Shown piece by piece: positions 3,825-29,485 of a DNA stretch of 64,000 bases. Every line of letters begins with the position of its first letter. The first letter of the stretch is position 1. The stretch covers positions 450,411 to 514,410 of the forward strand of contig NW_004797516.1 in assembly GCF_000002075.1 (NCBI RefSeq). The letters are read 5' to 3'. Origin of the DNA: Aplysia californica. Lineage: Eukaryota. The position numbers and the translations under genes were made by a program. Under the pieces are notes generated by a model. It did not search any database. It saw only the letters and a list, made by a program, of their open reading frames with translations, and was not told the DNA's origin.

Positions 3825-4120
3825 GCGTTCCCTATGCACTTTACAATTATCTGTATCCCAGAAGATCCTAACATACTCAGAAATATTCTAGGCTTTCCAA
3901 GAAGCATACAGTACAGGCAGCCAATTAAGCACTCATTACTAGCAACTTAATTAGATCTTATGCTTTCCATAGCAGGGTACGCATTCCCACCTGAGTGAAG
4001 TGATGAAAAATGATACAGAGTGCTTTTCCCCAAAACACAAAGTCTGACCAATGATGGGGTTCGAACCCACTACCTTTCGGTTGGGAGCCCAACAGCCTAA
4101 CCACTAGACTACTTGCACCA
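3825..4120 (-). mobile_element. tRNA-derived SINE (CORE-like), degraded copy
   Basis: The reverse strand shows an A-box TAGTCTAGTGG and a B-box GGTTCGAACCC, then a CACTTCACTCAGGTGGGAATGCGTACCC block like the copies at 13.0 and 45.1 kb. Confidence 0.65.
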
Positions 4121-9070: not shown

Positions 9071-11625
9071 TATGAAACACTTTCCGAAAAAAAAAGTGCC
9101 GGATTTGAATCAGACGTCGGCGATCAGCTCTAGTTCACCATGCATTTCTCCGCAAGGAATTAATAAGCTGCATCTGTTCGGTTTTCCAGTAGAATAGGTC
9201 TTGTTCTACCCCTGCCTCGTTAGCCTTCCATCCTTTCCACCAGTTAGAGCAAGATATTCAAGGCCTCAGGCCTTTCGGAAACTGCGCTGTTTGCCTCTGG
9301 TCCATAATGAAATTCTTGAGGCTTCTCTATATAATTATTTCAACTGTCTTTTTTTTTGNNNNNNNNNNNNNNNNNNNNNNNNNNNNNNNNNNNNNNNNNN
9401 NNNNNNNNNNNNNNNNNNNNNNNNNNNNNNNNNNNNNNNNNNNNNNNNNNNNNNNNNNGAGGCTACACTTAATCTTTTAGAACCTGTTTTGGTAGTTATT
9501 GAGGTGTTTTTAATTTTTCAGGATTTCACTTCTCATTAATTTATTGAAACTGGCATTAAAATTAAAGTCATATTATAGCTATTGGAATTCTTCAATTTCT
9601 GCGGAACATTTGGCGTCAGGGGTAATTATACTACTAATTATATATATCCTCGATATTTAAACTGTCGGACTTGTTTTGATCTTTTTGCCTTTGTTTATGA
9701 GAAGAATTGGCTATAGATCTATAGATCTGTTAGGCCTATAATGTAATGTTGAAAAACAGCACTGATCGGGAAGGAGCTATAATAAAGAGTAGCAGTAGAA
9801 AGGCAGAGGAAAATGTCAGAGCCCAGTGGAAAAAAATGGGGGGGGGGGGGGGGGGTTGAGACAAAAGAAGACGACAGAGCGTGATTATAGAGAGCAGGAA
9901 AGGTGGAATGAGAAAATCATTTTAGAGAAGATTTTTTTTCATTGTCGCTGTCAGAGGTGAGCAGTACCTATCTGGACAACCGAGAGCACTGTCTGGATCA
10001 TACATCACGCCCTTGCCTAACTCTGTTTTTGGCCTACAAGTAGGCCTGCGTATATAAAGGAGGTGGGGGTACTTAATGTACTAAATTTTAATTCGTTGTA
10101 GTAGGTAGGCTATTATGTGCCTAATTAGATCCTTTCCATTTAAGTCTCAATATCTTCCAAATTTTAAAATAAAATTAATCACATCTAACTTTACCAAAGA
10201 GCCTTTGAATAATCAACGAAACATAAATATTCATCTAGATCTCTGTACTTCAATACTTCTTTTCCATTAGCTTTTCGGGTACCCTTGTTTGAAGAAAACC
10301 TATTTCTATTTTGAGTTATAAATTAAAATATTATAATATTATGTTGCCAATGAATTCTTGTTCTTCCGAACACCGTAGATCACCTACAGTGTAACAGCTT
10401 TGGCTATTGCCAATGTCTCCAAACACTCCTGGGCCCTCAAAAACACGATTTGCCCAGGTCGCCCAAATAAACAAAGACACAAAAAGAGGGCAATCCTAAC
10501 AAGAGCAGTCAGGTCAATGCCCCCAAGTTCTCCCCGCGCCCCGAATTGCCCGATTACCCTAGTGCACTTTGCGACCACTGGCCACTTGCCCTAATTTTCG
10601 AAGAATCGAAGAAGTTGCAGGTCAAGGGTCATGCCCCCACTGTAAAGGTGTATGCCCAAAAGGCCCACGGATAAAAAGTGCAGGAGAACGACTTATCGCA
10701 GCTCGCTTATTTTGGTAAACACTAGTGAATTACGATTTCTCGTACAACAGATGTATATTATGTTGAAGACACATAATGAGCGTGCATGACATTATTTGAA
10801 ATGCGTAACATGATATACAATGATTGCACCCCCCCCCCCCCATTTTATGGGTACTATTATCGTTTCAATTTGTTTTCACTTCTTACCTATACAGGGTTCA
10901 AACAAAAACTTACAAAGCTCCATTTTTCCTCGTGTGCGATCAGGTGGGCTCGAGACATGATTCCCCCCCCCCCCCCCCCACACCCAGGAACTGATCTGAC
11001 CACGATGTCACTTGCGTACAGTTAGTAACGTCAGAAAAAGCTGGCACCCTGAACCTCACCCTCTGGCCTCTGGCCCTAGCCTAGCAGTCAGCGACCCAAC
11101 CACCAATCATCCTCGTCTCACGTGCCAAGAGCGAGCGACACTGCACACTGCACACAGACAGACATGACCTCAGAAGAATCAGCTGGGAGTGTGTGTGGCT
11201 CAGTTCGTGACCTCGCACGCAGCGTGTTGAGGACCTGAGGAAACAAACGTTCATGGAATCGCCTCATGGAATAGGCCTAGTGTGTTGTGTAAAATCTCAT
11301 TGTCGGTAGTCTACACTACAAAGAGAACGTGAAAGGTGAAAGTTCGGACACTTCAGTTGTTTAGGAGACATCAGCCCAAGTTTCTTTAATAATATAATAC
11401 TATATTTTCGGTCTCGTGGTATAATACAGTACGAGTACGTGACTCGTGAGTGTGTTTGTGAGGCAAAATATGATCCATTGGACTGTCTGAGAATGTTTTC
11501 TCTCTTCTGAAAATTAAAATTTTCTTAGCTCCGACTCGTTTTGTGGCGTTTGGCCCATTAAGTTGTGGCTAGTGGCGAGGTTATTTTCAGGAAGAAGACC
11601 ACTGGACACTGTTGTGGTTTCCAAT

Positions 11626-12068
11626 ATGAATTGTGTCTTACATAATGTGGCCCGGGCTTTTAGATCACGGGGACAATTGGCCAAGGCGCCACTTTGTTCT
11701 CCTACAGTATTATTGCAGTCTGTGATAAATCAAAATGTATGGTCTTCTGTACCTTGTTGTTGTACATGTTCAGAGCAGCTGAGGACGCAATTCTCTGTCA
11801 GACACAGATCTACGACATCTATAAAGACAAAGATGAGTGAACCACTAACTCGAAGTCATCAGAACTTGGATCTCATGCCTAAGGAGGCCCAGACTGTCAA
11901 TGTGGGTGAATCTGATGGTTGGCTTAACATCGGACAATACAGTGTCTTCGCCTGGAGTGTTTCTGGAGTAGAAAGCTGTATTGTGATCAAGTCAGAAGAT
12001 GTCCATATTGTTTTTGATATGGGTGTTGCTGTTCCAGAGAGCGTTCGAGGCATGAATGTTTTCATTAC
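11626..12068 (+). CDS. tRNase Z short form (TM-type), coding exon 1 of 5
   Basis: ATG at 11626 and a second in-frame ATG at 11833. Encodes AWSVSGVESC and VFDMG (motif I), ending VFIT at donor AC|GTAAGT (phase 2). Joining to exon 2 creates the motif II sequence T-HGHVDH. Confidence 0.88.
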
Positions 12069-12078
12069 GTAAGTAACC

Positions 12079-12158
12079 TAGAATCTAGATCTAGATCTAG
12101 ATCTAGAATCTAGTCTATTCTAGCTTCTAGATCTAGATTAGATCTAGATATCTAGCTA
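12079..12158. repeat. (TAGATC)n-type self-complementary simple repeat
   Basis: A CTAGATCTAGATCTAGATCTAG array starts about 10 bp after the tRNase Z exon-1 donor. Confidence 0.9.
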
Positions 12159-13016
12159 GCACTTCCCCCTGTTCTTTACCCCCTCCACTCTCTCTCTCTC
12201 TCTCTCTCTCTNNNNNNNNNNNNNNNNNNNNNNNNNNNNNNNNNNNNNNNNNNNNNNNNNNNNNNNNNNNNNNNNNNNNNNNNNNNNNNNNNNNNNNNNN
12301 NNNNNNNNNNNNNNNNNNNNNNNNNNNNNNNNNNNNNNNNNNNNNNNNNNNNNNNNNNNNNNNNNNNNNNNNNNNNNNNNNNNNNNNNNNNNNNNNNNNN
12401 NNNNNNNNNNNNNNNNNNNNNNNNNNNNNNNNNNNNNNNNNNNNNNNNNNNNNNNNNNNNNNNNNNNNNNNNNNNNNNNNNNNNNNNNNNNNNNNNNNNN
12501 NNNNNNNNNNNNNNNNNNNNNNNNNNNNNNNNNNNNNNNNNNNNNNNNNNNNNNNNNNNNNNNNNNNNNNNNNNNNNNNNNNNNNNNNNNNNNNNNNNNN
12601 NNNNNNNNNNNNNNNNNNNNNNNNNNNNNNNNNNNNNNNNNNNNNNNNNNNNNNNNNNNNNNNNNNNNNNNNNNNNNNNNNNNNNNNNNNNNNNNNNNNN
12701 NNNNNNNNNNNNNNNNNNNNNNNNNNNNNNNNNNNNNNNNNNNNNNNNNNNNNNNNNNNNNNNNNNNNNNNNNNNNNNNNNNNNNNNNNNNNNNNNNNNN
12801 NNNNNNNNNNNNNNNNNNNNNNNNNNNNNNNNNNNNNNNNNNNNNNNNNNNNNNNNNNNNNNNGGGGGGGGAAGGACATCTGGACCTCTGATGCTGGCAC
12901 ATCACTAAAACCAGGGACACCTGTCAAACATGAAACATCAGCAGACATGAGAACAAGTACTTTTGATTAATTGAAAAATAGAACATGCTCAAGGAACATA
13001 CTAACCCATTATAATC

Positions 13017-13347
13017 AGTCGGTGGCCTAGTGGTTACGCTCTCAGACTCGCAACCGTAAGGTCGCGGATTCGAATCCCGTCCTTGGGAAAATCACTTTGC
13101 ACAAATTTTCCTCACTTCACCTAGGTGAAAATGGGTACCCGGCTATAGACAGCGAAAGATCTTGTCAGTTTGATAGTGTTGAACGCCTGAAATCCGCAGC
13201 TTGCACTGTATGCTTCCTCGGAAGCTGAGAATGTTTCTGAGTTGTCTCAGAGGGTCTGTTGGGGAAATAATAGTTGTAAAGCGCATAGAGCATGCTCTTG
13301 AGCATGGATATGCGCTATATAAATGCAATTATTATTATTATTATTAT
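13017..13347 (+). mobile_element. tRNA-derived SINE with CORE-like central domain and (ATT)n tail, in tRNase Z intron 1
   Basis: A-box GGTGGCCTAGTGG, B-box GATTCGAATCC, central CCTTGGGAAAATCACTTT...AAATGGGTACC, and an ATT tail. Paralogous to 45073-45378. Confidence 0.8.
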
Positions 13348-14181
13348 CTTCTAACAAGGGAAATAACCAACTTTTCATTAAATGAGACTTATTACGCTGA
13401 TTACTTCCCTTTAGTCACATTGCGAGGCGTTAATTTTTTGGTGAAAAATGAAAAAAAACGGGGGGAATCCAAAAATTATGCTAATGTTGCAGAATTACGC
13501 GAGAAAACGCGGTCACACAATCGCATAATCCTACAGGGACAGATTATAGTGGTCCACTGGCAGGCTTAAACTTTTGATTTTTTTGTGTTATTTGCAAGAT
13601 TTTGGCATCACCTTTCAATCTGCCATTTTACGAGGACTGGGAAAAAGCATTTTTTTGGTATCAAATTCATTTTCTGGAGCTAGAGATTTTTAGATGTCTG
13701 AATCAGTGAATATACAGATACTTAAATTGTGGTTGGGGCAACTTCATTTGAAAATGCCTTCAAAAGGTACTGCAAGAAAACAAGACCGCTCGACTTTTGG
13801 CAGTAACCTATTTTGCATTTAGCCACCCCTGAAGCAAAACTAAATCACAAAAAAATCCGTCCACGCCCTCCCTCTCCTCTGATTCACACCTTACACACAC
13901 GAGTTCCACTCCATTCGCAAACCGTTCGGAGAAATAGAGTTCAAGTTTATTTTCCCGATCGATTGGAGAAATGTACAGCCAGCCTTTTTTTAATGTCCAT
14001 AATTGAACAATTATGCCCTGATTTATATTGTCTTGTAAATAATTATTTTCTTTCTTTATTTAAAAAAAAATTCAAATGTCAACTTTTCCTGCACTGAGGG
14101 TAAGTTTTTAATATAGGCCTATATTTTTTTGTTTTTTTTTTGTTGGTAATTTAATTATTATACTTTTCTTTTCCAATGCAG

Positions 14182-14389
14182 GCATGGTCATGTGGATCAC
14201 ATTGGAGCTGTGGCGAATCATGTGTCGAAACGAGGCTTGAATGGAATGAAACCAGCTCGTTATTTTGTTCCTCCCCACTTAGTGGATAACCTGAAGTCAG
14301 TCACGAAAGCTCATTATGAAATGGCTGAGACTGTGGAAGCTCTTGAGAATGTAAAGGTTCTACCGTTTGCAGAGGGGGATTGTGTAAGG
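14182..14389 (+). CDS. tRNase Z short form (TM-type), exon 2
   Basis: Acceptor ttttccaatgcag|g. Encodes HGHVDHIGA (the metallo-beta-lactamase HxHxDH motif) through GDCVR. Donor AGG|GTAAGT, phase 0. Confidence 0.92.
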
Positions 14390-15855
14390 GTAAGTTGAGT
14401 TTCAAATTTGTATTTTGCTTTGCAGAGGGGAGCTGATGGCAGCAATCTACAAGAAATTGGGCAGATGATCAAAATGCCAATAAGGGATGATGCTGTGTTT
14501 GTAAATAATTATTTTTTGGAAGTGGCTCTGTGTACCGCCCTCGCTTGAAACCTTTCCAGAAGAAACTGAACTGTATTTTTATAGAATCACTCCCATCTCG
14601 TGCTGCTACCCATGCTCGTTTTTCTCAATGTATTTGTAGGGGGGGGGGGGGGGGGACACACACAATATTTTAGGCGTTTTTTTTTGTTTTGGGTTTATGC
14701 ATGCTTTTGTAGTCATTAGGAGGGTTTCAGGGGGTCCTCCTCAACGAGCGATTACATGTAATGGCTTTTTAGTAGAGCCCCCCCCCACCCTAAAATGATG
14801 TGCCGTAACATCTATTAATTATGCCAAATTGTGTTCAGGGCCCTGAAAAGCTACAAGGTAACACCCTAAATGAAACGCGAGTGATTCTATAAAATTACCA
14901 AATAAACCAAATGGCCGAAAGATGGTAGAATCCATAACAGCACAGGTCCAATAAGTACGGTAGGCCTAGAGTGATTATCAAGGCAGTGAGCATACTTAAT
15001 TAGATTTAAATCTATACTTTAGAAGGCTGTACACATAGCCAGAAGGCTCCATACGCATAGCCACAGGCATTATTTTATTGAATGGAAAACATGGAGTGTG
15101 CAAGTTGAGGTTCTGCCTTTTGTCTTGACTAACTTAGTGGAAATTTGCACTGCTGCTGTTGCTGTGAATACCCACACTGCATGTATATGGTAATCATAAA
15201 ATGTTCTCAGCAAGTGGTTTTACAAAATTATTATATGGCATTAGTGTCTTACTGGACGCTTATTGTGACATTTAAAAAAAACATAAATAGTCATATATAC
15301 AAGGACATGATTTAATGTACTCTATAGTAAATAGTAATTGCTACAACTGCTATTATATCTGCAAACACTCCATTCTGGATGTGTCAGTGGCACTCATAGG
15401 ACTTAATTACAAGTTGATTATCTAGCTGAGAGGCAGCAGCACTTCTCAGCTTCACTACCAGAACTCCTGGGTATGCGGCGATGGTCACTACGGCTTGGCT
15501 TGATACAGTGTATTTGTCAGGCTACTTGGCGGAGTACGAAATTTGCTTCTATTTCTTGTCTATTGCCATCTGAAAAGGATACTTAAGACTGACTGTGTCT
15601 GTGCAGTAATAATAGTAAAGCTCTTGGCAATTGTCTGCAGAGGGCATGAAGTTTGATTCCCAAGTAAGAAAGTTTTTCTTATTGAGTATATTTGTCTACT
15701 GTGACATTGTATTAATCTAGACTGTCGGGGTTAACCCTGACAGGCAGTATCAAAGCAGCCCACCCCTGAAATTATCTGAAATATGTCGATGAAGGCGAAA
15801 CATATCTCTACCATCTAAGATTGACCTTATGTTTCCACTTTTTCGTCTCTTTCAG

Positions 15856-16048
15856 CTCAACAGCAGGTTCTTTGTAAAAACTTTCCCGACTGTGCATCGG
15901 ATCTGCAGTCAGGGTTACATTGTGTACAAGGAAGAGAAGAGGCTCAAAGAGGAATACAGGGGAATGGAAGGCTTTGAGGTGGCAGCTCTTCACCGGGAGG
16001 GTAGAGAGATCCATGAAGTCAGCATTACTCCTGAGATTGCATATACAG
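15856..16048 (+). CDS. tRNase Z short form (TM-type), exon 3
   Basis: Acceptor ctctttcag|. Encodes FPTVHRICSQGY (motif III), the short TM-type flexible arm RLKEEYRGMEGFEVAALHREGREI, and IAYTG. Donor G|GTAGAT, phase 1. Confidence 0.92.
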
Positions 16049-16821
16049 GTAGATATGTTGTTACCTTTGCTGGCTATGATGATGAAGCGGAGTCAAGATT
16101 CACTTGTGGGGAGAGGCAATTTCAGAATTTAAAAATTTATTTATTGTTTTTTTTTAAATGGTGCCCAAACAATATTTGTAAAGGACTCATTCTCTGTAAA
16201 ACTTGTTTCCTCTGAAATAATTTTTTTTTATTGGTAAAATTTTAAATTGTTCATTGATTCATCCAATACGCACTTGTTATGTTTTGTACATTGTGTAACA
16301 AAATGTAATTTCCAGTTACATTCTTACAGTTTGCCTTGCTGTTTTGGATTAACTGAAACTAATTGGTTTATTGATTATTGTATTACGTGTCACCGTATCC
16401 ATCCAGGATGTCTTGCACCTGGTGTTAAAGGTCCGCGCTCATATGACCTTAGCAGTTGCGAGCGCCGTAAAACCTTATACTATACATGTTAAAGGTCCAA
16501 ATGACATCATATTTTTTTTTAACATAATTTCTTTAAGTTGCCAATCCCAGATTACACAGACTAAGAATCTGAGGGCTGTTGGAAAAATACAGTAAATTGT
16601 AAAAGTGATCCCAATTTTAAATCTAAGTGCTAGTTTAGTTTTTTTTAAAGGGAAAGCTGCTGCCTGGTGCTATAGTTAGGCTCTGTGCTTTTGCTCACAG
16701 AAGCTGTGAGTTCAATTCCCAAGTGAGAAAGCTGATAAGTTTTCTTGAATCCTTTTTTTGATGATTGTTTTTGTTTTTATAGTAACTGATATCTTTGCTA
16801 TATTTATCTCTTTTCTTTCAG

Positions 16822-16920
16822 GTGACACAGTTTTTGATATTTTCCTGAATCCTCCAAATCCAGATCTGCTGAAGGTTAAGTTACTGATAACAGAAGCAAC
16901 TTTCCTTGATGATGAAATAG
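16822..16920 (+). CDS. tRNase Z short form (TM-type), exon 4
   Basis: Acceptor ttttctttcag|. Encodes GDT (motif IV) through LLITEATFLDD (xExT motif). Donor G|GTATGA, phase 1. Confidence 0.92.
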
Positions 16921-17886
16921 GTATGATGTTTGGTGTTTCTCTTGATGTGGAAAGTTCTGTTACCCTGTTGAATCCTTTTGTGAGATAAGGTGATCAGCCG
17001 TCTTAATTTGGAAGGACAAGTTGATTGACGTTATTTATATGGTCTGCTCTTTCTCCTTCCTGTTGGTGTTGCATACAAATTTTTCTTTTATCAGCTTCTA
17101 CACGAGATACAGCTTCTATCACAGTTCAGCAGCAACATCACAGGAATTTGTTTGTCTCTGCTTTTACTTTTTTGGTATGGAGGATGGGACTGATAAGTCC
17201 ACACTTACTGCACTCTCATTGGGACCACCTATAGGCACCAGTTTCCATAGTGAAGTGGTGGACACTGAGCCAGTTTGTACAACAACAAAATAAAATAGAA
17301 ACTTTAAAAAAAATGTTAAACTACATTTCTTTGCAGCTCTGCGTCTTTTTAGTTTATTTAGAAGTGGAAATAAACCATATTTTATTTCCATTTTTTAATT
17401 TCTCATTTATGTATCTGAAGTAATTTTATGAGTTTGATGTTTCTGGAAGCGTGATAAAAAGAAAACTTTGGAAAAATAACAATTACTTTAATTTCCTATC
17501 ATTATTATACAAAGTGATGTTAACATTGTAGTTTTATTGTTGTGGCTCATGTTTTGCTAAATGACAAGAGAGTACAGGTTTGAAACCTGTTTTCTTGTTT
17601 CCTTTAGTAGTTTAAGATGTGTCTTCCAAATTTTTATAAGCACATATATATAAAGATGCTGTTTCGTGGGGTGCACATCAAGAATTGATGGTTGTGGGTA
17701 TAAGTTGGTTTGATGATACTTCGAAGAAATGAAAGTTTCAAAGGCTACATTGGTCAGAAATGGTAGCACCGAGTCCGCTGTACGTTGGCCAGTGTGCTGA
17801 TATTAACTTTGAAAACTTTCCCCATGTACCCATTTCTTTTTTGAGAATGTGAATGTGCTAATATTGTTACAAATTAATGTTTTCAG

Positions 17887-18119
17887 GTAAGAACATGGTC
17901 CAGAAAGCGAGAGACAGAGGTCACACTCACTTGTGTGAAATTGCGCAAAACGCAGAGCTCTTTGAGGACGTTGAACATATTGTCCTGGTCCATTTCTCCA
18001 ACAAGTACCCTCCCAAGTACATCAGTGACTGCATCCGGGACAAACTGCCTCTCTCATTGAGGAACAAGGTCACTCCTGGGACTGTTGCAAAAGCCACCAA
18101 GGCTACATGTCAGTTATGA
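17887..18119 (+). CDS. tRNase Z short form (TM-type), exon 5 (terminal)
   Basis: Acceptor gttttcag|. Encodes ARDRGHTHL (HxH motif) and LVHFSNKY (motif V), ending at TGA 18117-18119. The spliced CDS is 1176 nt = 391 aa with all phases compatible. Confidence 0.92.
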
Positions 18120-20470
18120 TGAATACAGCTTTTAGCATTTTTTAATAACGTTATAAATGATTTTATGAAGTTGTTAAAGATAGTAGATCAAAGTGGTCTT
18201 CATATGATCGTTTGTCGGACAATCTTAAGCCGGTGGTTGGAGGGCAGCACAGTATGATCCTACCTCTTTTGTCTTGCTTTTTCCCCAGCGCTAAATGACC
18301 ATTTTTGTGTAGAGATGTGCTTCTTTTTATTCAAAAGCTCCAGTGGGATGCTGTAATATATACTTTCATTGGACTCTAAAGAATATAAGGAGCATCCATT
18401 ATTACCCGTTTTTGCAGGATTTCCAGTTTAGATTGTTCTAAACTGACTTGTTGGTGTACAGGCATCTGTGGTATAGCGGTTAGGCGCATCACTGTTGCTC
18501 ACCGAGGATGTGAATTTGATTCCTGTGTGGAGGTTGTTTTTTTTATCGAGTATATCGATCTACGGTCTGCTGGGGCATTTCCCTCTCAGCGCAAGTTGGT
18601 CTTGACAATGACATGCAAGGTCAAAGCAACCTACATCTTAATTGATCTTTATTTGTACATTACCGATCTGACGAGAGTAATCCATACGAAACCTGGTGGT
18701 CCGTTTGGAAAAGAACACGTGGGAACCTTTGAAACGTTTGCTAAGTGACTTCTAAGATGTGGCTGTCATTTCGTGTTAGCTACGGAGTGGTCTGAAGAAA
18801 GTTGAGTCAAAATTGATCTGAATTGTGTTGTTGCAGTGTAAAACTTCTACAATTACTTTTTACCTACTGGTTTATGTACGTCCCTTGGATTGAAAGGTCC
18901 AAGATATCTCCACATTGTGTAGGGAGATGTTAATTTTGGAATATGTTTTCCTTTTGTGCAAGTTATGACTTAGGGGTCAGACTGATATTAATATTAATTT
19001 GTGTTCGGATTTGATTGTTCTTGTGATTTTTAACTCTTAAATTTGTTTTTAGGTTGGCTATTTTTTTTTTTTCAAACTAAAATGGGGCAGGGTTTTTTTG
19101 TTGTTTAAAAAAAAATCCTTATTCTTTCTTTGCATACTCAGAGTTTGTTTAGGAGGTGGAATTTTCAAAGTTTGTTGTAATCATCAATGAAGAAAAGTGT
19201 GGGATAGGAATTGGGTTAATGTTCAATTAGCCTGGACTATTGAGGACTTATATTACAGTAGGCACCTGCTGTCCCTGTTATGGCAGGGCGGGGACCACAT
19301 TTACATACACTGTGGCTAATGAGTAATAAATAGGATTGTGTTTATGACACAGATTACCCCCTACCGATTTTTCCTTTCTTTTCCAGTGATATTATTTGCT
19401 CCTCATCCCATCTTTTTATTACCTTAGTCTCATGTAGGTTGACTAGACATCATTTGAGGTGCAAGGGAAGCGTTAAAAACAACAGGCTCTACTCTATGTG
19501 CTTTACAACTATTTTGTAATCAAATAGTCACTACAGTTGGGAAAAGGAACATACATAAAACTGCTGTAAATCAACCACCCGGTGCCCACTTTTCATCCGG
19601 TCATGTTTTCATTATAAATCTCACTACTCCACGGAAAGGCAATGTGACGATGTTTTGCCACACTGAGATCATGCTATCGTGCTAAGTCATTCAAGTCACC
19701 GATTGAAAAAATCTGGGTTAACACCAAAGTATAACCAGCCTCTCTCCTTCCCCCCGTATACATGTCATAAAATGTAACATCTACACAGTCAACTTAGGCC
19801 TCTTGTGGGTATGTAGGTACAATTTAAATGACCATGGATGTTGTTTTGCTTCATTTGCTTTTTTCTGCTTTTTTGTCCATTTGTTTTAGGATTTTGGCAA
19901 TGGTTGGACCCAGTTATAGCTGAGCAAGTCTTCTTTTCCGAATGCCTGCTATGAATGAACTTTTTAACTGCACATATGAGATCGGGCTTGTGGATAAATA
20001 TTAAGAAGCCTGCTATAGCCGAAATGGTGTTATTACCAAAATGTCATAAGATGGGTTCACTCCTGAGTAATTTCAAATTCTTGTATGACTTGTAAAGTGA
20101 ATGTTTTTGTCGAGTTTTGTTCTCTTTCTGCCCTGAAATTATGTGCAAGAAGTTTAATTTTTGTAGAGGGCATTTGTTCTTTCCGTCGGTTCTTTCTCTA
20201 TGCCAATCTTAATTTTTGCAGAACATTATTGTGCCAATGTGCTTCTCAAGCAAACATTTCAGTTCTACTTGTCTTTGTTTCATTCACAATGACTCACTAC
20301 AACTTGTTCGGTGGGTGGTTGGCATGTGCTCCGGTGTGGTTTGGGCCTTCTTTCCTATTAAATATCTATCCTCCTTAATCTCTCCTCCTTTTTAGTGTTT
20401 GTCACTCTCTTGAAACACCTGTATTGTTCGGCATTTACATAACCTAATTGTGTTGCGAGCCCTGCAAAAG

Positions 20471-27664: not shown

Positions 27665-29485
27665 TTTAAAAAATAAATAACTTGCTAGGTGCATTTAGAA
27701 AAGAGCTCAAGAATGTGAAGAGTTCCAGGCTAGAGCAGCTTTATCAAGAGGAGAATCCGTTTTAATTGAGCAAATATGCTCGAGTTGTGTGTGAATGTAA
27801 ACAGGTTGAAGAAAGTGAAGTTGTTTCTTGACTTTCAACTGAGGATGGGGACACTATGGAAAGATCAAGCAACTGGCATAAGAATAAAAATAATAGGAAT
27901 AAATATGGCCTCTAATCCCTCTAAGCGCTGTTCAATGCAGAATTATAACTCATCTTAACAGTCAAATTAAAGGACAGAAAATGCACTTTGTGCCACTATT
28001 TAAGAATACACACATGCGCACGCGCACTCACACACACATTACTCCTAGTCCCACACAAGACTCCAGGGTACGGACAGAGAGATATGGTAAACAGACACAT
28101 CTCCCAGGCTTCAACATTTTGAATTGCTTTTAATTAAATGAACTTTTGAATTGCTTTTANNNNNNNNNNNNNNNNNNNNNNNNNNNNNNNNNNNNNNNNN
28201 NNNNNNNNNNNNNNNNNNNNNNNNNNNNNNNNNNNNNNNNNNNNNNNNNNNNNNNNNNNTGTGTATGTGTGTGTATGTGTGTGTATGTGTGTAGTAGTAG
28301 TAGTAGTATAAGGTTTTACGGCGCTCGCAACTGCTAAGGTCATATGAGCGCGCGAAACACAAGTTGTTCACCTCTGCGAAAGTTCACTTCACGACTGGTA
28401 ACTAATTTATTTTAAAATGCTAAAAAGTTAAAATATTCAAATTCGGTGTAAATACATTTGTGATCTAAAACAACTTTTAAGTAACAATAAAAATTTTAAA
28501 TAATATCAGATTCACTTTACAACTCGCCATAAAGGCCAATGGCCTTTATAAAATTTAAAATTCTGCTGGGAACAACGACGGAGAAAATATCCTGCAATTT
28601 CTTGCATTTATAATATTTCCTTCGGATCTCTCCAAAGTCCAGACATTCTGTTAAAATGTGTCTAATGGTAAAATCTGTGTCGCATCCGACACAGAACGGC
28701 TTCTCCTCTCCCTGTAGGAGGTATTTGTGAGTCAGGGCCGTGTGTCCGATGCGCAATCGAGTAAAAATGACTTCGTCTCTTCTGGAGAGGTCCGAAGGAT
28801 TTCGCTGTTCTAGTCTGGGTTTAATTTCATATAATTTATTATTTTTCTGGTTTTCCCAGTGGCTCTCCCACAGACTGGAGGTGTACTTTTTGACTTTATT
28901 TCTAAAGTCAGTCTGTGGGAGAGTGTTTGTCGTTGATCCCAGCAGAAGGGATGAAGCTTTTTTAAAAAATAAATAACTTGCTAGGTGCATTTAGAAAAGA
29001 GCTCAAGAATGTGAAGAGTTCCAGGCTAGAGCAGCTTTATCAAGAGGAGAATCCGTTTTAATTGAGCAAATATGCTCGAGTTGTGTGTGAATGTAAACAG
29101 GTTGAAGAAAGTGAAGTTGTTTCTTGACTTTCAACTGAGGATGGGGACACTATGGAAAGATCAAGCAACTGGCCTTTACACTTGTTTTTGGTCTAATGGC
29201 ATAAGAATAAAAATAATAGGAATAAATATGGCCTCTAATCCCTCTAAGCGCTGTTCAATGCAGAATTATAACTCATCTTAACAGTCAAATTAAAGGACAG
29301 AAAATGCACTTTGTGCCACCATTTAAGAATACACACATGCGCACGCGTACTCACACACACATTACTCCTAGTCCCACACAAGACTCCAGGGTACGGACAG
29401 AGAGATATGGTAAACAGACACATCTCCCAGGCTTCAACATTTTGAATTGCTTTTAATTAAATGAACTTTTGAATTGCTTTTAATT
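27665..29485 (+). repeat. ~500-bp direct duplication (27665-28158 and 28961-29485) flanking a gap and the LINE fragment
   Basis: Near-identical copies. The second has an extra 27 bp bounded by TGGC microhomology. Confidence 0.9.
28290..28957 (-). mobile_element. 5'-truncated I/Nimb-clade LINE: ORF2 C-terminus, 3' UTR, stem-loop and (TAC)n tail
   Basis: The ORF has RRDEVIFTRLRIGHT..HKYLL..CVGC....TIRHILTEC (CCHC knuckle). The 3' end is GCGCTCATATGACCTTAGCAGTTGCGAGCGCCGTAAAACC plus (TAC)n. Confidence 0.88.

What the first reader, a model, noticed from the sequence alone, without database searches (positions are those of the whole stretch)
11626..18119. A Thermotoga/plant-type (TM-type) short tRNase Z in an animal genome, with four spliceosomal introns
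Seen: a 391-aa metallo-beta-lactamase with HGHVDH, AWSVSGVESC in place of the PxKxRN loop, a short arm RLKEEYRGMEGFEVAALHREGREI, ITEAT rather than HEAT, and GHTH rather than HST. Established: these substitutions (EGxSxxG-like, KL/Gly-rich short arm, xExT, HxH) define TM-type tRNase ZS, such as T. maritima Trz and Arabidopsis TRZ1/TRZ2. Model animals have ELAC1/ELAC2 types instead. Inference: this is a third, poorly recognised animal tRNase Z lineage, either ancestrally retained and lost in model animals or horizontally acquired and intronised. The T. maritima enzyme can cut after CCA, so the substrate range may differ from ELAC2. Host SINEs in the introns argue against contamination.
Basis: partly seen in the sequence, partly recalled or inferred. 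Interest (0 to 1): 0.75.

Follow-up and report, generated by a model that had tools for sequence, protein, structure and literature searches.

The report
Plant-type tRNase Z in Aplysia
Besides the two usual animal enzymes that trim tRNA 3' ends, this sea-slug genome carries an expressed third one of the kind known from plants and Thermotoga, shared with many molluscs, worms and acorn worms but not seen in model animals.

Summary
Window 11626-18119 (+) is an intact five-exon, four-intron (all GT-AG) gene of 391 codons. The N gap (12212-12863) lies inside intron 1. Spliced RNA contigs from 4 of 4 runs join 12068 directly to 14182, so no coding letters are missing.

Exons 2-5 match NCBI's "tRNase Z TRZ1 [Aplysia californica]" letter for letter, so the gene is already auto-annotated, from the second ATG.

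- **Closest relatives:** the full-length protein hits rice RNase ZS1 (7xgt) at E 3e-50, T. maritima tRNase Z at 2e-11 and human ELAC1 only at 0.02. An AlphaFold model ranks them the same way.
- **TM-type motifs:** all are present except the "EG" of EGxSxxG.
- **Other tRNase Z genes:** the same genome also holds ELAC1-type and ELAC2-type genes, so this is a third lineage.
- **Distribution:** orthologues occur in six animal phyla: Mollusca, Nemertea, Brachiopoda, Platyhelminthes, Tardigrada and Hemichordata.
- **Phylogeny:** the animal sequences form a strongly supported clade with oomycetes, apart from plants and bacteria.

The two tRNase Z surveys I read (2011, 2012) do not report this type in animals.

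Verdict: a real new member of a known kind, with moderate interest. The scan's notes hold no earlier finding of it.

The parts
11200..11625 (+). 5' leader present in RNA contigs. It holds four small upstream ORFs (ATG at 11253, 11266, 11470, 11493) and an in-frame stop at 11515.
   Evidence: table 8: X8 record 18 covers 11200-12068 and starts 64 letters further upstream; X4, X2 and X1 reach 11428, 11450 and 11417. One search lists the upstream ATGs. Contigs cannot show the true start.
11626..12068 (+). Exon 1 (coding). It holds a 69-residue basic N-terminal extension, the AWSVSG site (11950-11979) that stands where PxKxRN would be, and Motif I VFDMG (12010-12024).
   Evidence: An exhaustive HMMER search of this exon gave 52 relatives at E<=0.001.
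11833..11835 (+). Second in-frame ATG (MSEPLT...). This is the start of NCBI's 324-aa model. It is kept in most heterobranch orthologues and is the candidate start of a short isoform.
12069..14181 (+). Intron 1 (phase 2, GT..AG). It holds the assembly gap 12212-12863 and a SINE-like dispersed repeat at 13018-13345.
14182..14389 (+). Exon 2, with Motif II HGHVDH (14183-14200).
   Evidence: its only PDB hit is rice RNase ZS1, E 2.2e-4..
14390..15855 (+). Intron 2 (phase 0, GT..AG).
   Evidence: table 5: joint seen in X2, X4 and X8..
15856..16048 (+). Exon 3, with the Motif III His (TVHR, 15889-15900) and the short flexible arm with a KL-type motif (15940-16011).
   Evidence: rice RNase ZS1 at 8.7e-10, T. 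maritima tRNase Z at 0.098..
16049..16821 (+). Intron 3 (phase 1, GT..AG). It holds a 54-nt dispersed element at 16434-16487.
   Evidence: joint seen in X1, X4 and X8..
16822..16920 (+). Exon 4, with Motif IV (G)DT and the xExT motif ITEAT (16887-16901).
16921..17886 (+). Intron 4 (phase 1, GT..AG).
   Evidence: The junction is supported by P0057 only; it was not covered by the reads call.
17887..18119 (+). Exon 5 (coding part), with HxH motif GHTH (17919-17930), Motif V VHFSNKY (17988-18008) and stop TGA at 18117-18119.
   Evidence: rice RNase ZS1 at 2.9e-6..

Best explanation
**What it is.** This is the Aplysia gene for a short tRNase Z of the plant RNase ZS1/TRZ1 class ('TM-type'). It is a single-domain metallo-beta-lactamase-fold phosphodiesterase that uses two metal ions. 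The gene is intact, single-copy, spliced and transcribed. It exists in addition to the animal's ELAC1-type and ELAC2-type genes.

**Shown.**
- All metal-binding and proton-relay residues are present: HxHxDH, the Motif III His, the Motif IV Asp, the Glu of xExT, both His of HxH and the Motif V His.
- The fold is that of rice RNase ZS1.
- The tRNA-holding arm is the short KL type.
- The PxKxRN loop, which in other tRNase Zs blocks cutting of CCA-ended tRNA, is absent.

**Inferred mechanism.** The enzyme binds the tRNA body with the short basic arm and hydrolyses a phosphodiester at the tRNA 3' end without being inhibited by CCA.
- I think its most likely job is repair and recycling of tRNA 3' ends: removing a 2',3'-cyclic phosphate or a short tail from tRNAs that lost CCA. 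Rice RNase ZS1/TMS5 is reported to do this. I put about 0.45 on this.
- Ordinary removal of pre-tRNA 3' trailers is the second possibility, at about 0.3.

**Inferred isoforms.** The two conserved in-frame ATGs (11626 and 11833) give a long form with a basic, acid-poor presequence, probably mitochondrial, and a short cytosolic form. I put about 0.4 on this.

**Inferred history.** The gene is old in bilaterians and was lost in the lineages of the usual model animals.

**What the confidence figure covers.** It refers to the identity (an expressed plant-ZS1/TM-type tRNase Z acting on tRNA 3' ends). The sub-claims carry the lower figures given above.
For: **Identity.**
- Exons 2-5 are exact substrings of NCBI 'tRNase Z TRZ1 [Aplysia californica]' (P0057). 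Exon 1 is identical from residue 76 on.
- P0057 against all PDB sequences: rice RNase ZS1 7xgt at E 3.2e-50 over 34-309; T. maritima 1ww1 at 2.1e-11; ELAC1 at 0.021; no B. subtilis or E. coli RNase Z at E<=1.
- Exon by exon: exons 2, 3 and 5 each hit 7xgt best.
- The AlphaFold2 model has pLDDT 93.9 and pTM 0.89. Foldseek gives 7xgt at 1.2e-27 (TM 0.88-0.91 on the target), then T. maritima 2e7y at 6.5e-17, then B. subtilis RNase Z and ELAC1 near 1e-12.

**Motifs.**
- H82, H84, D86, H87, H164, D216, E239, H260 and H283 are invariant in 48 aligned relatives.
- 23 of 23 animal rows lack P.[KP].R[NG] and G.P.GP.

**Tree of 57 rows x 303 columns.**
- The TM-like clade has support 100/98.
- Aplysia sits inside heterobranch gastropods at 100/100.
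- Animals plus oomycetes have support 100/97.

**Expression and splicing.**

**Third lineage.**. Single copy.

**Function of relatives.**
- Rice TMS5/RNase ZS1 removes 2',3'-cyclic phosphate from cP-deltaCCA-tRNAs (passages of PMC11831146; abstract of PMC11897441).
- T. maritima and Arabidopsis enzymes are not blocked by CCA (passages of PMC3161902).

**Presequence.**
- It has 9 K/R against 1 D/E in 69 residues.
- The first-Met column is invariant in 13 of 13 aligned heterobranch sequences, and an internal Met is kept in most.
- ATG 11626 lies inside contigs of 4 of 4 runs.
Against: **Family scores.**
- Curated bacterial models do not claim it. On the orthologue P0004, TIGR02650 (Thermotoga equivalog) scores 35.9 bits against a cut-off of 507. 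That is lower than TIGR02651 (general RNase Z) at 58.8 bits against a cut-off of 293.
- A six-frame search of the genome with TIGR02650 found nothing.
- Exon 1 alone has no PDB hit.
- The exon pieces have no Pfam hit.

**Motifs.**
- The 'EG' of the plant EGxSxxG is not kept.
- The Thermotogae rows themselves keep HEAT-like and HS-like letters, so the 'Thermotoga' label is loose.

**Function.**
- No animal member has been assayed. Function is carried over from plants at about 36-40% identity.
- Aplysia also has ELAC1, which in humans is reported to do the same repair (abstracts). The division of labour is therefore unknown.

**Start codon and targeting.**
- NCBI uses the second ATG.
- Contigs cannot show a transcript start.
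- Four small upstream ORFs precede ATG 11626.
- No targeting predictor was available.

**Reads.** The runs are labelled 'RNA?' as a guess. Their RNA nature rests on the spliced contigs and the empty intron bins.

**Distribution.** Absence from other animal phyla is not shown. The homologue searches use a word index and list only the best 120 hits.
Confidence: 0.8

Rival explanations
1. It was acquired horizontally rather than inherited from the first eukaryotes. The transfer could have run between an oomycete-like lineage and an early animal, in either direction, or from bacteria. The gene then gained introns and spread vertically.
For: - Animals and oomycetes form one clade at 100/97, apart from plants at 95/96.
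- Animals alone are one clade in only 36% of bootstrap trees.
- The distribution in animals is patchy. No vertebrate, arthropod, nematode, echinoderm, annelid, cnidarian or sponge name appears among the listed hits.
- Bdellovibrio and planctomycete enzymes branch near the eukaryotic ones.
Against: - Six animal phyla spanning deuterostomes, spiralians and an ecdysozoan carry it.
- The best tree with animals held as one clade is not worse (lnL +0.17, AU p 0.513).
- Within-animal groups follow taxonomy: gastropods, heterobranchs, nemerteans, hemichordates and flatworms are each together.
- About 27 of the 52 exon-1 relatives end within two residues of the same exon boundary, by my own count from the table. 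This suggests an old shared intron position.
- Patchiness also fits repeated loss.
Confidence: 0.25
2. It keeps the fold but no longer works on tRNA. Its main substrates would be mRNAs, R-loops or cyclic nucleotides. Rice RNase ZS1 is also reported to act on UbL40 mRNA and R-loops, and the related Apyc1 nucleases act on cyclic nucleotides.
For: - A weak Pfam match to Anti-Pycsar Apyc1 (PF23023, 16.9 bits) on P0004, and precomputed PF23023 labels on many family members.
- Apyc1 structures appear in the fold search at about 4e-12.
- The title and abstract of PMC13276404 link TMS5 to R-loops.
- The genome already has ELAC1 and ELAC2 for tRNA work.
Against: - The PF23023 score is far under its cut-off of 50.
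- Rice RNase ZS1 and T. maritima tRNase Z outrank Apyc1 by 15 and 5 orders of magnitude in the fold search.
- The tRNA-binding arm with the KL motif is kept in 21 of 23 animal rows; the two cestode rows have it largely deleted.
Confidence: 0.12
3. It is a divergent ELAC1 orthologue (bacterial-type short tRNase Z).
For: It has similar length and the same superfamily. NCBIfam's general RNase_Z model scores higher than the Thermotoga model.
Against: - ELAC1 matches only at E 0.021, against 3e-50 for rice RNase ZS1.
- It has no PxKxRN/PxPxRG motif, no GP arm, no HEAT and no HST.
- A separate true ELAC1-type gene sits on contig C684.
- The tree separates it from canonical RNase Z at 100/98.
Confidence: 0.01
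4. It is foreign DNA (plant, oomycete or bacterial) in the assembly, or a dead copy.
For: Its nearest well-known relatives are plant enzymes, and an assembly gap lies inside the locus.
Against: - It has four GT-AG introns, one holding a host repeat with thousands of copies.
- Spliced transcripts appear in runs of four studies.
- The five exons are the only matches to P0057 in 927 Mb, and all are on the window's own contig.
- The closest relatives are other gastropods at 69-75% identity.
- The frame is open and all catalytic residues are present.
Confidence: 0.01

Closest known systems
Rice RNase ZS1 (TMS5; PDB 7xgt) and Arabidopsis TRZ1: plant 'TM-type' short tRNase Z
   Same: - Alignable end to end (residues 34-309 against 30-295, E 3.2e-50).
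- Same fold (TM 0.88-0.91 on the target, rmsd 2.4-2.9 A).
- Short arm with the KL-type motif, xExT (TEAT), HxH (HTH), no PxKxRN, and the same Motifs I-V.
   Different: - About 36% identity only.
- The plant 'EG' of EGxSxxG is replaced by an animal-typical A/D-W (AWSVSG).
- A 69-residue basic N-terminal extension with a second conserved Met is present in heterobranch gastropods.
- It branches with oomycetes, not inside plants.
- It co-exists with an ELAC1-type enzyme, which flowering plants lack (PMC3161902 passages).
Thermotoga maritima tRNase Z (PDB 1ww1, 2e7y), the founder of the 'TM-type'
   Same: - Second-best solved relative by sequence (2.1e-11) and by fold (6.5e-17).
- Short arm with a basic K/L-rich stretch.
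- Thermotogae are the deepest branch of the same clade.
   Different: - Only 20-23% identity, on a long branch (2.0 changes per column).
- The two Thermotogae rows in my alignment keep HEAT-like and HS-like letters where Aplysia has TEAT and HTH.
ELAC1 (animal bacterial-type short tRNase Z)
   Same: Same superfamily and size class. In humans it is reported to repair ANKZF1-cleaved tRNAs (abstracts), the same kind of job that the rice enzyme does.
   Different: - Sequence match only at E 0.021.
- ELAC1 has the PxPxRG loop, a GP arm, HEAT, HST and AxDx (PMC3433465 section 11). This protein has none of the first four.
- Aplysia has its own ELAC1-type gene elsewhere.
Oomycete and Bdellovibrio/planctomycete 'MBL fold metallo-hydrolase / ribonuclease Z' proteins
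   Same: Same family and same motif set. Oomycete proteins are 40-44% identical and form a clade with the animal ones at 100/97. In the Bdellovibrio genome and the Mesoaciditoga genome checked, this is the only match to the RNase_Z model; in the other Thermotogae genome it is the best of two.
   Different: They are unspliced or differently organised genes of other kingdoms. Only the planctomycete rows keep the plant-like E-G (EGYSRAA); Bdellovibrio has HGLSLSG and oomycetes have (V/A)-(R/K) before the conserved S/C.

Membership tests
TM-type tRNase ZS (as defined in PMC3161902) | Metallo-beta-lactamase Motifs I-V, including HxHxDH | tested here: met
   VFDMG, HGHVDH, TVHR, TGDT and VHFS are all present. 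The metal ligands are invariant in 48 aligned relatives.
TM-type tRNase ZS (as defined in PMC3161902) | Short (~30 aa) flexible arm without a GP motif, carrying the KL motif KLKxxYxxLxGxxIxxLK | tested here: met
   RLKEEYRGMEGFEVAALH matches at L, K, Y, G and L, with K>R, L>M, I>V and K>H elsewhere. No G.P.GP occurs in 23 of 23 animal rows. In the model the arm is about residues 181-202 of P0057, with two short helices. The definition was read.
TM-type tRNase ZS (as defined in PMC3161902) | [quoted passage not shown] | tested here: met
   P.[KP].R[NG] is absent from 23 of 23 animal rows.
TM-type tRNase ZS (as defined in PMC3161902) | Gly-rich EGxSxxG at the place of PxKxRN | tested here: inconclusive
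   The aligned letters are FAWSVSG. The S and the last G are kept, but E-G is not. Animals share (A/D)-W-S-x-(S/A)-G, and oomycetes also lack E-G. The paper itself notes that variants exist and that T. maritima is only weakly similar here.
TM-type tRNase ZS (as defined in PMC3161902) | xExT in place of HEAT | tested here: met
   TEAT. The Glu is invariant in 48 rows.
TM-type tRNase ZS (as defined in PMC3161902) | HxH in place of HST | tested here: met
   HTH. The first His is invariant and the second is kept in at least 90% of 48 rows.
TM-type tRNase ZS (as defined in PMC3161902) | Groups with plant TRZ1-type and Thermotoga enzymes, apart from bacterial-type RNase Z | tested here: met
   The clade of 55 TM-like rows stands against 2 canonical RNase Z rows at 100/98. 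The PDB ranking agrees. Only two outgroup rows were used.
TM-type tRNase ZS (as defined in PMC3161902) | Absence of the C-terminal AxDx motif (PMC3433465) | not tested
   I did not align the protein to ELAC1-type sequences over that stretch.
TM-type tRNase ZS (as defined in PMC3161902) | Activity: cuts tRNA 3' ends without CCA anti-determination, or removes a 2',3'-cyclic phosphate | not testable with these tools
   This needs recombinant enzyme assays.
ELAC1 / bacterial-type tRNase ZS | PxKxRN or PxPxRG loop, GP-motif arm of ~55 aa, HEAT and HST | tested here: not met
   None of the four is present. ELAC1 matches at E 0.021 only.
ELAC2 / tRNase ZL | Two-domain protein of ~750-900 aa with a pseudo-MBL N-half | tested here: not met
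   It is a 391-aa single domain. The ELAC2-type gene lies on contig C161.
NCBIfam TIGR02650 RNase_Z_T_toga (equivalog) | Score at or above the curated cut-off (507 bits) | tested here: not met
   35.9 bits on the orthologue P0004. No six-frame match in the genome. The model is a narrow bacterial equivalog.
Apyc1 anti-Pycsar nucleases (PF23023) | Score at or above Pfam's gathering cut-off (50 bits) | tested here: not met
   16.9 bits on P0004. Apyc1 ranks tenth in the fold search.

The most novel reading that the evidence does not exclude
The last common ancestor of bilaterians had three tRNase Z genes. The third one, the TRZ1/TMS5 type, survives in slowly evolving marine lineages (molluscs, nemerteans, brachiopods, flatworms, hemichordates) and was lost independently in vertebrates, arthropods and nematodes.

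In heterobranch gastropods it gained a presequence and a second start codon. One gene would then supply a CCA-indifferent tRNA 3'-end repair enzyme to both mitochondria and cytosol. From recall, not from a call: mollusc mitochondria are among the few places where overlapping tRNA genes need 3'-end repair.

The tight animal-oomycete clade would record an ancient transfer between the two kingdoms.
Probability: 0.3. Interest if true: 0.6.

Novelty: new member of a known kind. Interest (0 to 1): 0.5.

Why it matters
**What the literature says.**
- The standard picture is that animals have ELAC2, and often ELAC1. The 2012 survey of 81 metazoans describes only these two clades (PMC3433465; sections 9, 11 and 14 read).
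- The 2011 plant survey suggested that the TM-type 'might be plant-specific' (PMC3161902; passage read).

**What this gene shows.**
- Neither statement holds. A plant-type enzyme is encoded, spliced and transcribed in Aplysia.
- Database proteins of six animal phyla belong to the same clade.

**Why it is timely.**
- The rice member (TMS5) has recently been reported to be the cyclic phosphatase that recycles tRNAs clipped during ribosome quality control.
- Human ELAC1 is reported to do that job in mammals.
- Animals that have both enzymes offer a natural test of why two unrelated-looking short tRNase Zs exist and how they divide the work.

**Practical point.** Automatic names now attached to the animal proteins, such as 'tRNase Z TRZ2, chloroplastic' in an octopus, are misleading.

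**Limit.** The enzyme class, fold and chemistry are known, so this widens a family's range and does not reveal a new kind of system.

Tried and rejected
**Exon-by-exon searches.**
- Pfam on the five exon translations gave nothing real. Four had no family and exon 5 had a chance L7Ae match at E 0.14.
- NCBIfam gave only weak RNase Z hits for exon 3 (TIGR02650 E 0.022, TIGR02651 E 0.088) and exon 5 (TIGR02651 E 0.0025).
- Exon 1 had no PDB hit at E<=10.
- Exon 4 (33 aa) was not sent to the PDB search.

**Joined model.** For full-length work I used proteins that the databases already hold: P0057, NCBI's Aplysia protein, and P0004.

**Other searches.**
- TIGR02650 in six frames over the genome: no match.
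- PF13691 (the ELAC2 N-domain family) found only the ELAC1-type exon, at E 0.043. The N-half of the ELAC2-type gene was therefore not located.
- The profile search was swamped by planctomycete proteins. There were 7247 hits and only 120 were listed, so it did not show plants or most animals. The single-sequence search with the hemichordate protein did.
- The ESM Atlas only repeated the plant 'nuclear ribonuclease Z' link.
- ARAGORN and Rfam found no tRNA in 11000-19000.
- The scan's own notes had nothing on this gene.

**Literature.**
- 'TM-type tRNase' and variants occur in 3 papers of the library, none on animals.
- A search on tRNase Z with mollusc, hemichordate or oomycete gave nothing relevant.
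- The ELAC1 preprint 10.64898/2026.10.07.757187 has no occurrence of phylogen*, TRZ1, Thermotoga, mollus*, invertebrate or plant.
- PMC13276404 builds its tree from Arabidopsis and rice only.
- The original TMS5 cyclic-phosphatase paper is not in the library. I know its claim only through citing papers.
Table S1 of PMC3433465 would say which Aplysia protein was counted as its 'one tRNase ZS', and I could not see it.

**Tree.**
- I picked the 57 rows by hand from the hit lists to span named taxa: 24 animal, 5 oomycete, 11 plant or green alga, 2 unnamed EukProt, 13 bacterial and 2 canonical RNase Z. All other hits were left out.
- The tardigrade row and one outgroup row have very long branches.

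Full report
**1. The gene and the gap.**

Window 11626-18119 (+) reads as five exons: 11626-12068, 14182-14389, 15856-16048, 16822-16920 and 17887-18119. They total 1173 coding bases, which is 391 codons. The four introns are all GT..AG, with phases 2, 0, 1 and 1.

The assembly gap 12212-12863 lies inside intron 1. I tested continuity first, as asked.
- In the one reads call (window 11200-17199; runs X1, X2, X4, X8 from four studies), a contig in each of the 4 runs passes from 12068 to 14182 in consecutive record positions. For example, X8 record 18 maps letters 65-933 to 11200-12068 and 934-1140 to 14182-14388.
- The orthologue P0004 and NCBI's Aplysia protein P0057 read FIT|HGHVDH without any insert.

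So no exon is hidden in the gap and the frame is continuous.

The other junctions stand as follows.
- 14389|15856 appears in 3 of 4 runs.
- 16048|16822 appears in 3 of 4 runs.
- The last junction lay outside the 6000 letters laid. It rests on P0057 alone, where exons 4 and 5 are adjacent exact substrings.

Intron bins without repeats have zero depth in all four runs. Together with the spliced contigs, this shows the runs hold RNA, although their label 'RNA?' is only a guess.

**2. Whose gene it is.**

Exons 2-5 are exact substrings of 'tRNase Z TRZ1 [Aplysia californica]' (P0057, 324 aa). Exon 1 is identical from residue 76 on, and a two-residue difference sits near P0057's N-terminus.

The gene is therefore already in NCBI's annotation, starting at the second ATG (11833). 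P0057 finds only these five exons in the 927-Mb assembly, so the gene is single copy.

The repeat at 13018-13345 in intron 1 gave 4691 first-look candidates. All 40 that were scored matched: 39 at 86-92% identity on other contigs, and the query's own place. With the splicing evidence, this excludes contamination.

**3. What kind of enzyme.**

I searched the spliced model exon by exon and left the joined step out.
- Exons 2, 3 and 5 each hit rice RNase ZS1 (7xgt) best, at E 2.2e-4, 8.7e-10 and 2.9e-6.
- T. maritima tRNase Z is second for exon 3, at E 0.098.
- Exon 1 had no PDB hit.
- Exon 4 was not sent to the PDB search.

For full-length work I used the database's own protein P0057.
- Rice RNase ZS1: E 3.2e-50 over residues 34-309.
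- T. maritima: 2.1e-11.
- Human ELAC1: 0.021.
- No B. subtilis or E. coli RNase Z at E<=1.

An AlphaFold2 model built on a 48-row alignment has pLDDT 93.9 and pTM 0.89. Foldseek ranks 7xgt first (E 1.2e-27, TM 0.88-0.91 on the target), then T. maritima 2e7y (6.5e-17), then B. subtilis RNase Z and ELAC1 near 1e-12.

The defining features of the TM-type were read in PMC3161902. They are a short arm without a GP motif and with a KL motif, no PxKxRN with EGxSxxG instead, xExT for HEAT, and HxH for HST.
- Aplysia has RLKEEYRGMEGFEVAALH, TEAT and HTH.
- It has no PxKxRN-like and no GP motif, and the same holds for 23 of 23 animal rows.
- Only the 'EG' is missing. Animals share (A/D)-W-S-x-(S/A)-G.
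- All metal and proton-relay residues are invariant in the 48 rows.

Some results point the other way.
- Curated bacterial models score it far under their cut-offs. The general RNase_Z model scores above the Thermotoga one: 58.8 against 35.9 bits on P0004.
- The two Thermotogae rows themselves keep HEAT-like letters.

The accurate name is therefore 'plant RNase ZS1/TRZ1-type'. Thermotoga is a distant relative.

**4. A third lineage.**

Six-frame searches of the genome with the RNase_Z model found a multi-exon gene on contig C684.
- It has HEAT, an H-S-T motif and ...THVSQRY.
- Its first exon hits human ELAC1 best, at 2.9e-15.

They also found a gene on C161.
- Its exon hits the C-half of human ELAC2 best, at 4.1e-11.

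So Aplysia has ELAC1-type, ELAC2-type and this gene.

**5. Who else has it.**

Searches with P0004 gave 54 hits. Searches with the hemichordate protein P0074 gave 281 hits, of which 120 were listed. The named animals are:
- many gastropods, a chiton, nine bivalves and two octopuses;
- two nemerteans;
- Lingula;
- Macrostomum and three cestode genera;
- the tardigrade Hypsibius;
- three hemichordates.

Plants and green algae, many oomycetes and bacteria follow. The bacteria are Bdellovibrio, planctomycetes, Tepidisphaerae and Thermotogae.

No vertebrate, arthropod, nematode, echinoderm, annelid, cnidarian or sponge name is among the listed hits. The search uses a word index and lists are cut at 120, so this is not proof of absence.

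Automatic names vary: 'tRNase Z TRZ1', 'TRZ1-like', 'nuclear ribonuclease Z-like', 'RNZ1-like', and 'tRNase Z TRZ2, chloroplastic' for Octopus sinensis.

**6. Tree.**

This was a careful IQ-TREE run (57 hand-picked rows, 303 columns, LG+C20+F+G4 by PMSF).
- All 55 TM-like rows separate from two canonical RNase Z rows at 100/98.
- Thermotogae branch deepest.
- Plants and green algae form a clade at 95/96.
- Animals plus oomycetes form a clade at 100/97.
- Aplysia lies within heterobranch gastropods at 100/100.
- Animals alone are one clade in 36% of bootstrap trees.
- Holding animals together costs nothing (lnL +0.17, AU p 0.513).

The within-animal groups follow taxonomy. This favours long vertical descent in bilaterians with many losses. 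A transfer between the animal and oomycete lineages remains open.

**7. The N-terminal extension.**

The 69 residues before the second Met hold 9 K/R and 1 D/E, and are rich in S/T.
- Twelve heterobranch sequences align with the first Met in the same column, which is invariant.
- Most keep an internal Met at the place of 11833.
- Their first 60 residues hold 7-11 K/R against 0-3 D/E.
- ATG 11626 lies inside contigs of all four runs, and one contig reaches beyond 11200.

I infer two isoforms from alternative starts, the long one with a mitochondrial-type presequence. This is inference only. No targeting predictor was available, contigs cannot show a transcript start, and four small upstream ORFs precede ATG 11626.

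**8. How it probably works.**

The chemistry is that of tRNase Z. A two-metal site is built by HxHxDH, the Motif III and V His and the Motif IV Asp. The Glu of xExT and the His of HxH serve for proton transfer (roles as stated in PMC3161902). The short basic arm holds the tRNA.

PMC3161902 links the lack of the PxKxRN loop to indifference to a 3' CCA in the T. maritima and Arabidopsis enzymes.

The rice enzyme is reported to remove the 2',3'-cyclic phosphate from tRNAs clipped by Vms1 during ribosome quality control (PMC11831146 passages; PMC11897441 abstract). Human ELAC1 is reported to do this after ANKZF1 cleavage (abstracts).

I therefore put tRNA 3'-end repair or recycling first (about 0.45), ordinary trailer removal second (about 0.3), and non-tRNA substrates third.

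**9. Novelty.**

- The 2012 survey of 81 metazoans describes one ZS clade with PxPxRG and one ZL clade. It mentions the TM-type only as lacking AxDx (sections 9, 11 and 14 read).
- The 2011 plant survey says the type 'might be plant-specific'.
- 'TM-type tRNase' occurs in three papers of the library, none about animals. Two further searches found nothing.
- I could not see the surveys' supplements.

The gene is thus annotated automatically but, as far as these searches reach, not described. It is a new member of a known kind. It widens the family's range and sets up a clear experiment, but it does not reveal a new mechanism.

Noticed in passing
window 16434-16487 (intron 3): A 54-nt element with an internal inverted repeat. 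It gave 799 first-look candidates in the genome, and most of the 40 scored copies are 100% identical over positions 40-93 of the query. Its summed depth in the RNA contigs is very high (5,000-42,000 per bin), with many contigs breaking on both sides. It looks like a very young or strongly conserved short dispersed element that sits in many transcripts.
   Followed up: partly
window 13018-13345 (intron 1): A ~330-bp dispersed repeat ending in (ATT)n. It gave 4691 first-look candidates, and 39 scored copies elsewhere are 86-92% identical. It is abundant in RNA contigs. ARAGORN and Rfam do not call its head a tRNA.
   Followed up: partly
window 11626-11832 and alignment A2: Inside the basic N-terminal extension, a C-x2-C-S motif (CCCTCSE here) recurs in 8 of 13 aligned heterobranch sequences. 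It is missing in the stylommatophoran and hygrophilan ones. Its purpose is unknown.
   Followed up: no
window 11833-11860: NCBI's Aplysia protein has two residues more near its N-terminus (an extra R-S in an R-S repeat) than the window. The four RNA runs show no insertion or deletion there.
   Followed up: partly
tree: Oomycete enzymes group with the animal ones (100/97) and not with plants or other protists. This is either an old transfer between the two lineages or a shared ancestral form.
   Followed up: partly
proteins: By my count from the table, about 27 of the 52 exon-1 relatives (unnamed genomic ORFs, 30-75% identical) stop within two residues of the position of the exon 1 / intron 1 boundary. 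Several end in F-I-R, as expected when a split Ser/Thr codon is read on into GT. The position of intron 1 seems widely shared.
   Followed up: no
L010, L024, L025 (Bdellovibrio bacteriovorus and two Thermotogae genomes): In the Bdellovibrio and the Mesoaciditoga genome the TM-like gene is the only match to the RNase_Z model at E<=1e-5. In the other Thermotogae genome it is the best of two. It is presumably their sole tRNase Z.
   Followed up: partly
database names: Animal orthologues carry transferred names that cannot be right. Examples are 'tRNase Z TRZ2, chloroplastic' (Octopus sinensis) and 'mitochondrial 3'-tRNA processing endonuclease Trz2' (Bulinus truncatus).
   Followed up: no
G000:C718:221153-221563 (locus L005): Another metallo-beta-lactamase exon (…THWHHDHVGG…) matched the RNase_Z model weakly (E 0.0185). 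It is probably a different MBL hydrolase and not a tRNase Z.
   Followed up: no
window 4053-4112 (-): Rfam tRNA match just above the gathering score (31.1 against 29 bits). It could be a tRNA gene or a tRNA-derived repeat head.
   Followed up: no
window 28517-28990 (-): A 157-aa ORF that looks like the C-terminal part of a retroelement protein. This impression is mine and was not searched.
   Followed up: no
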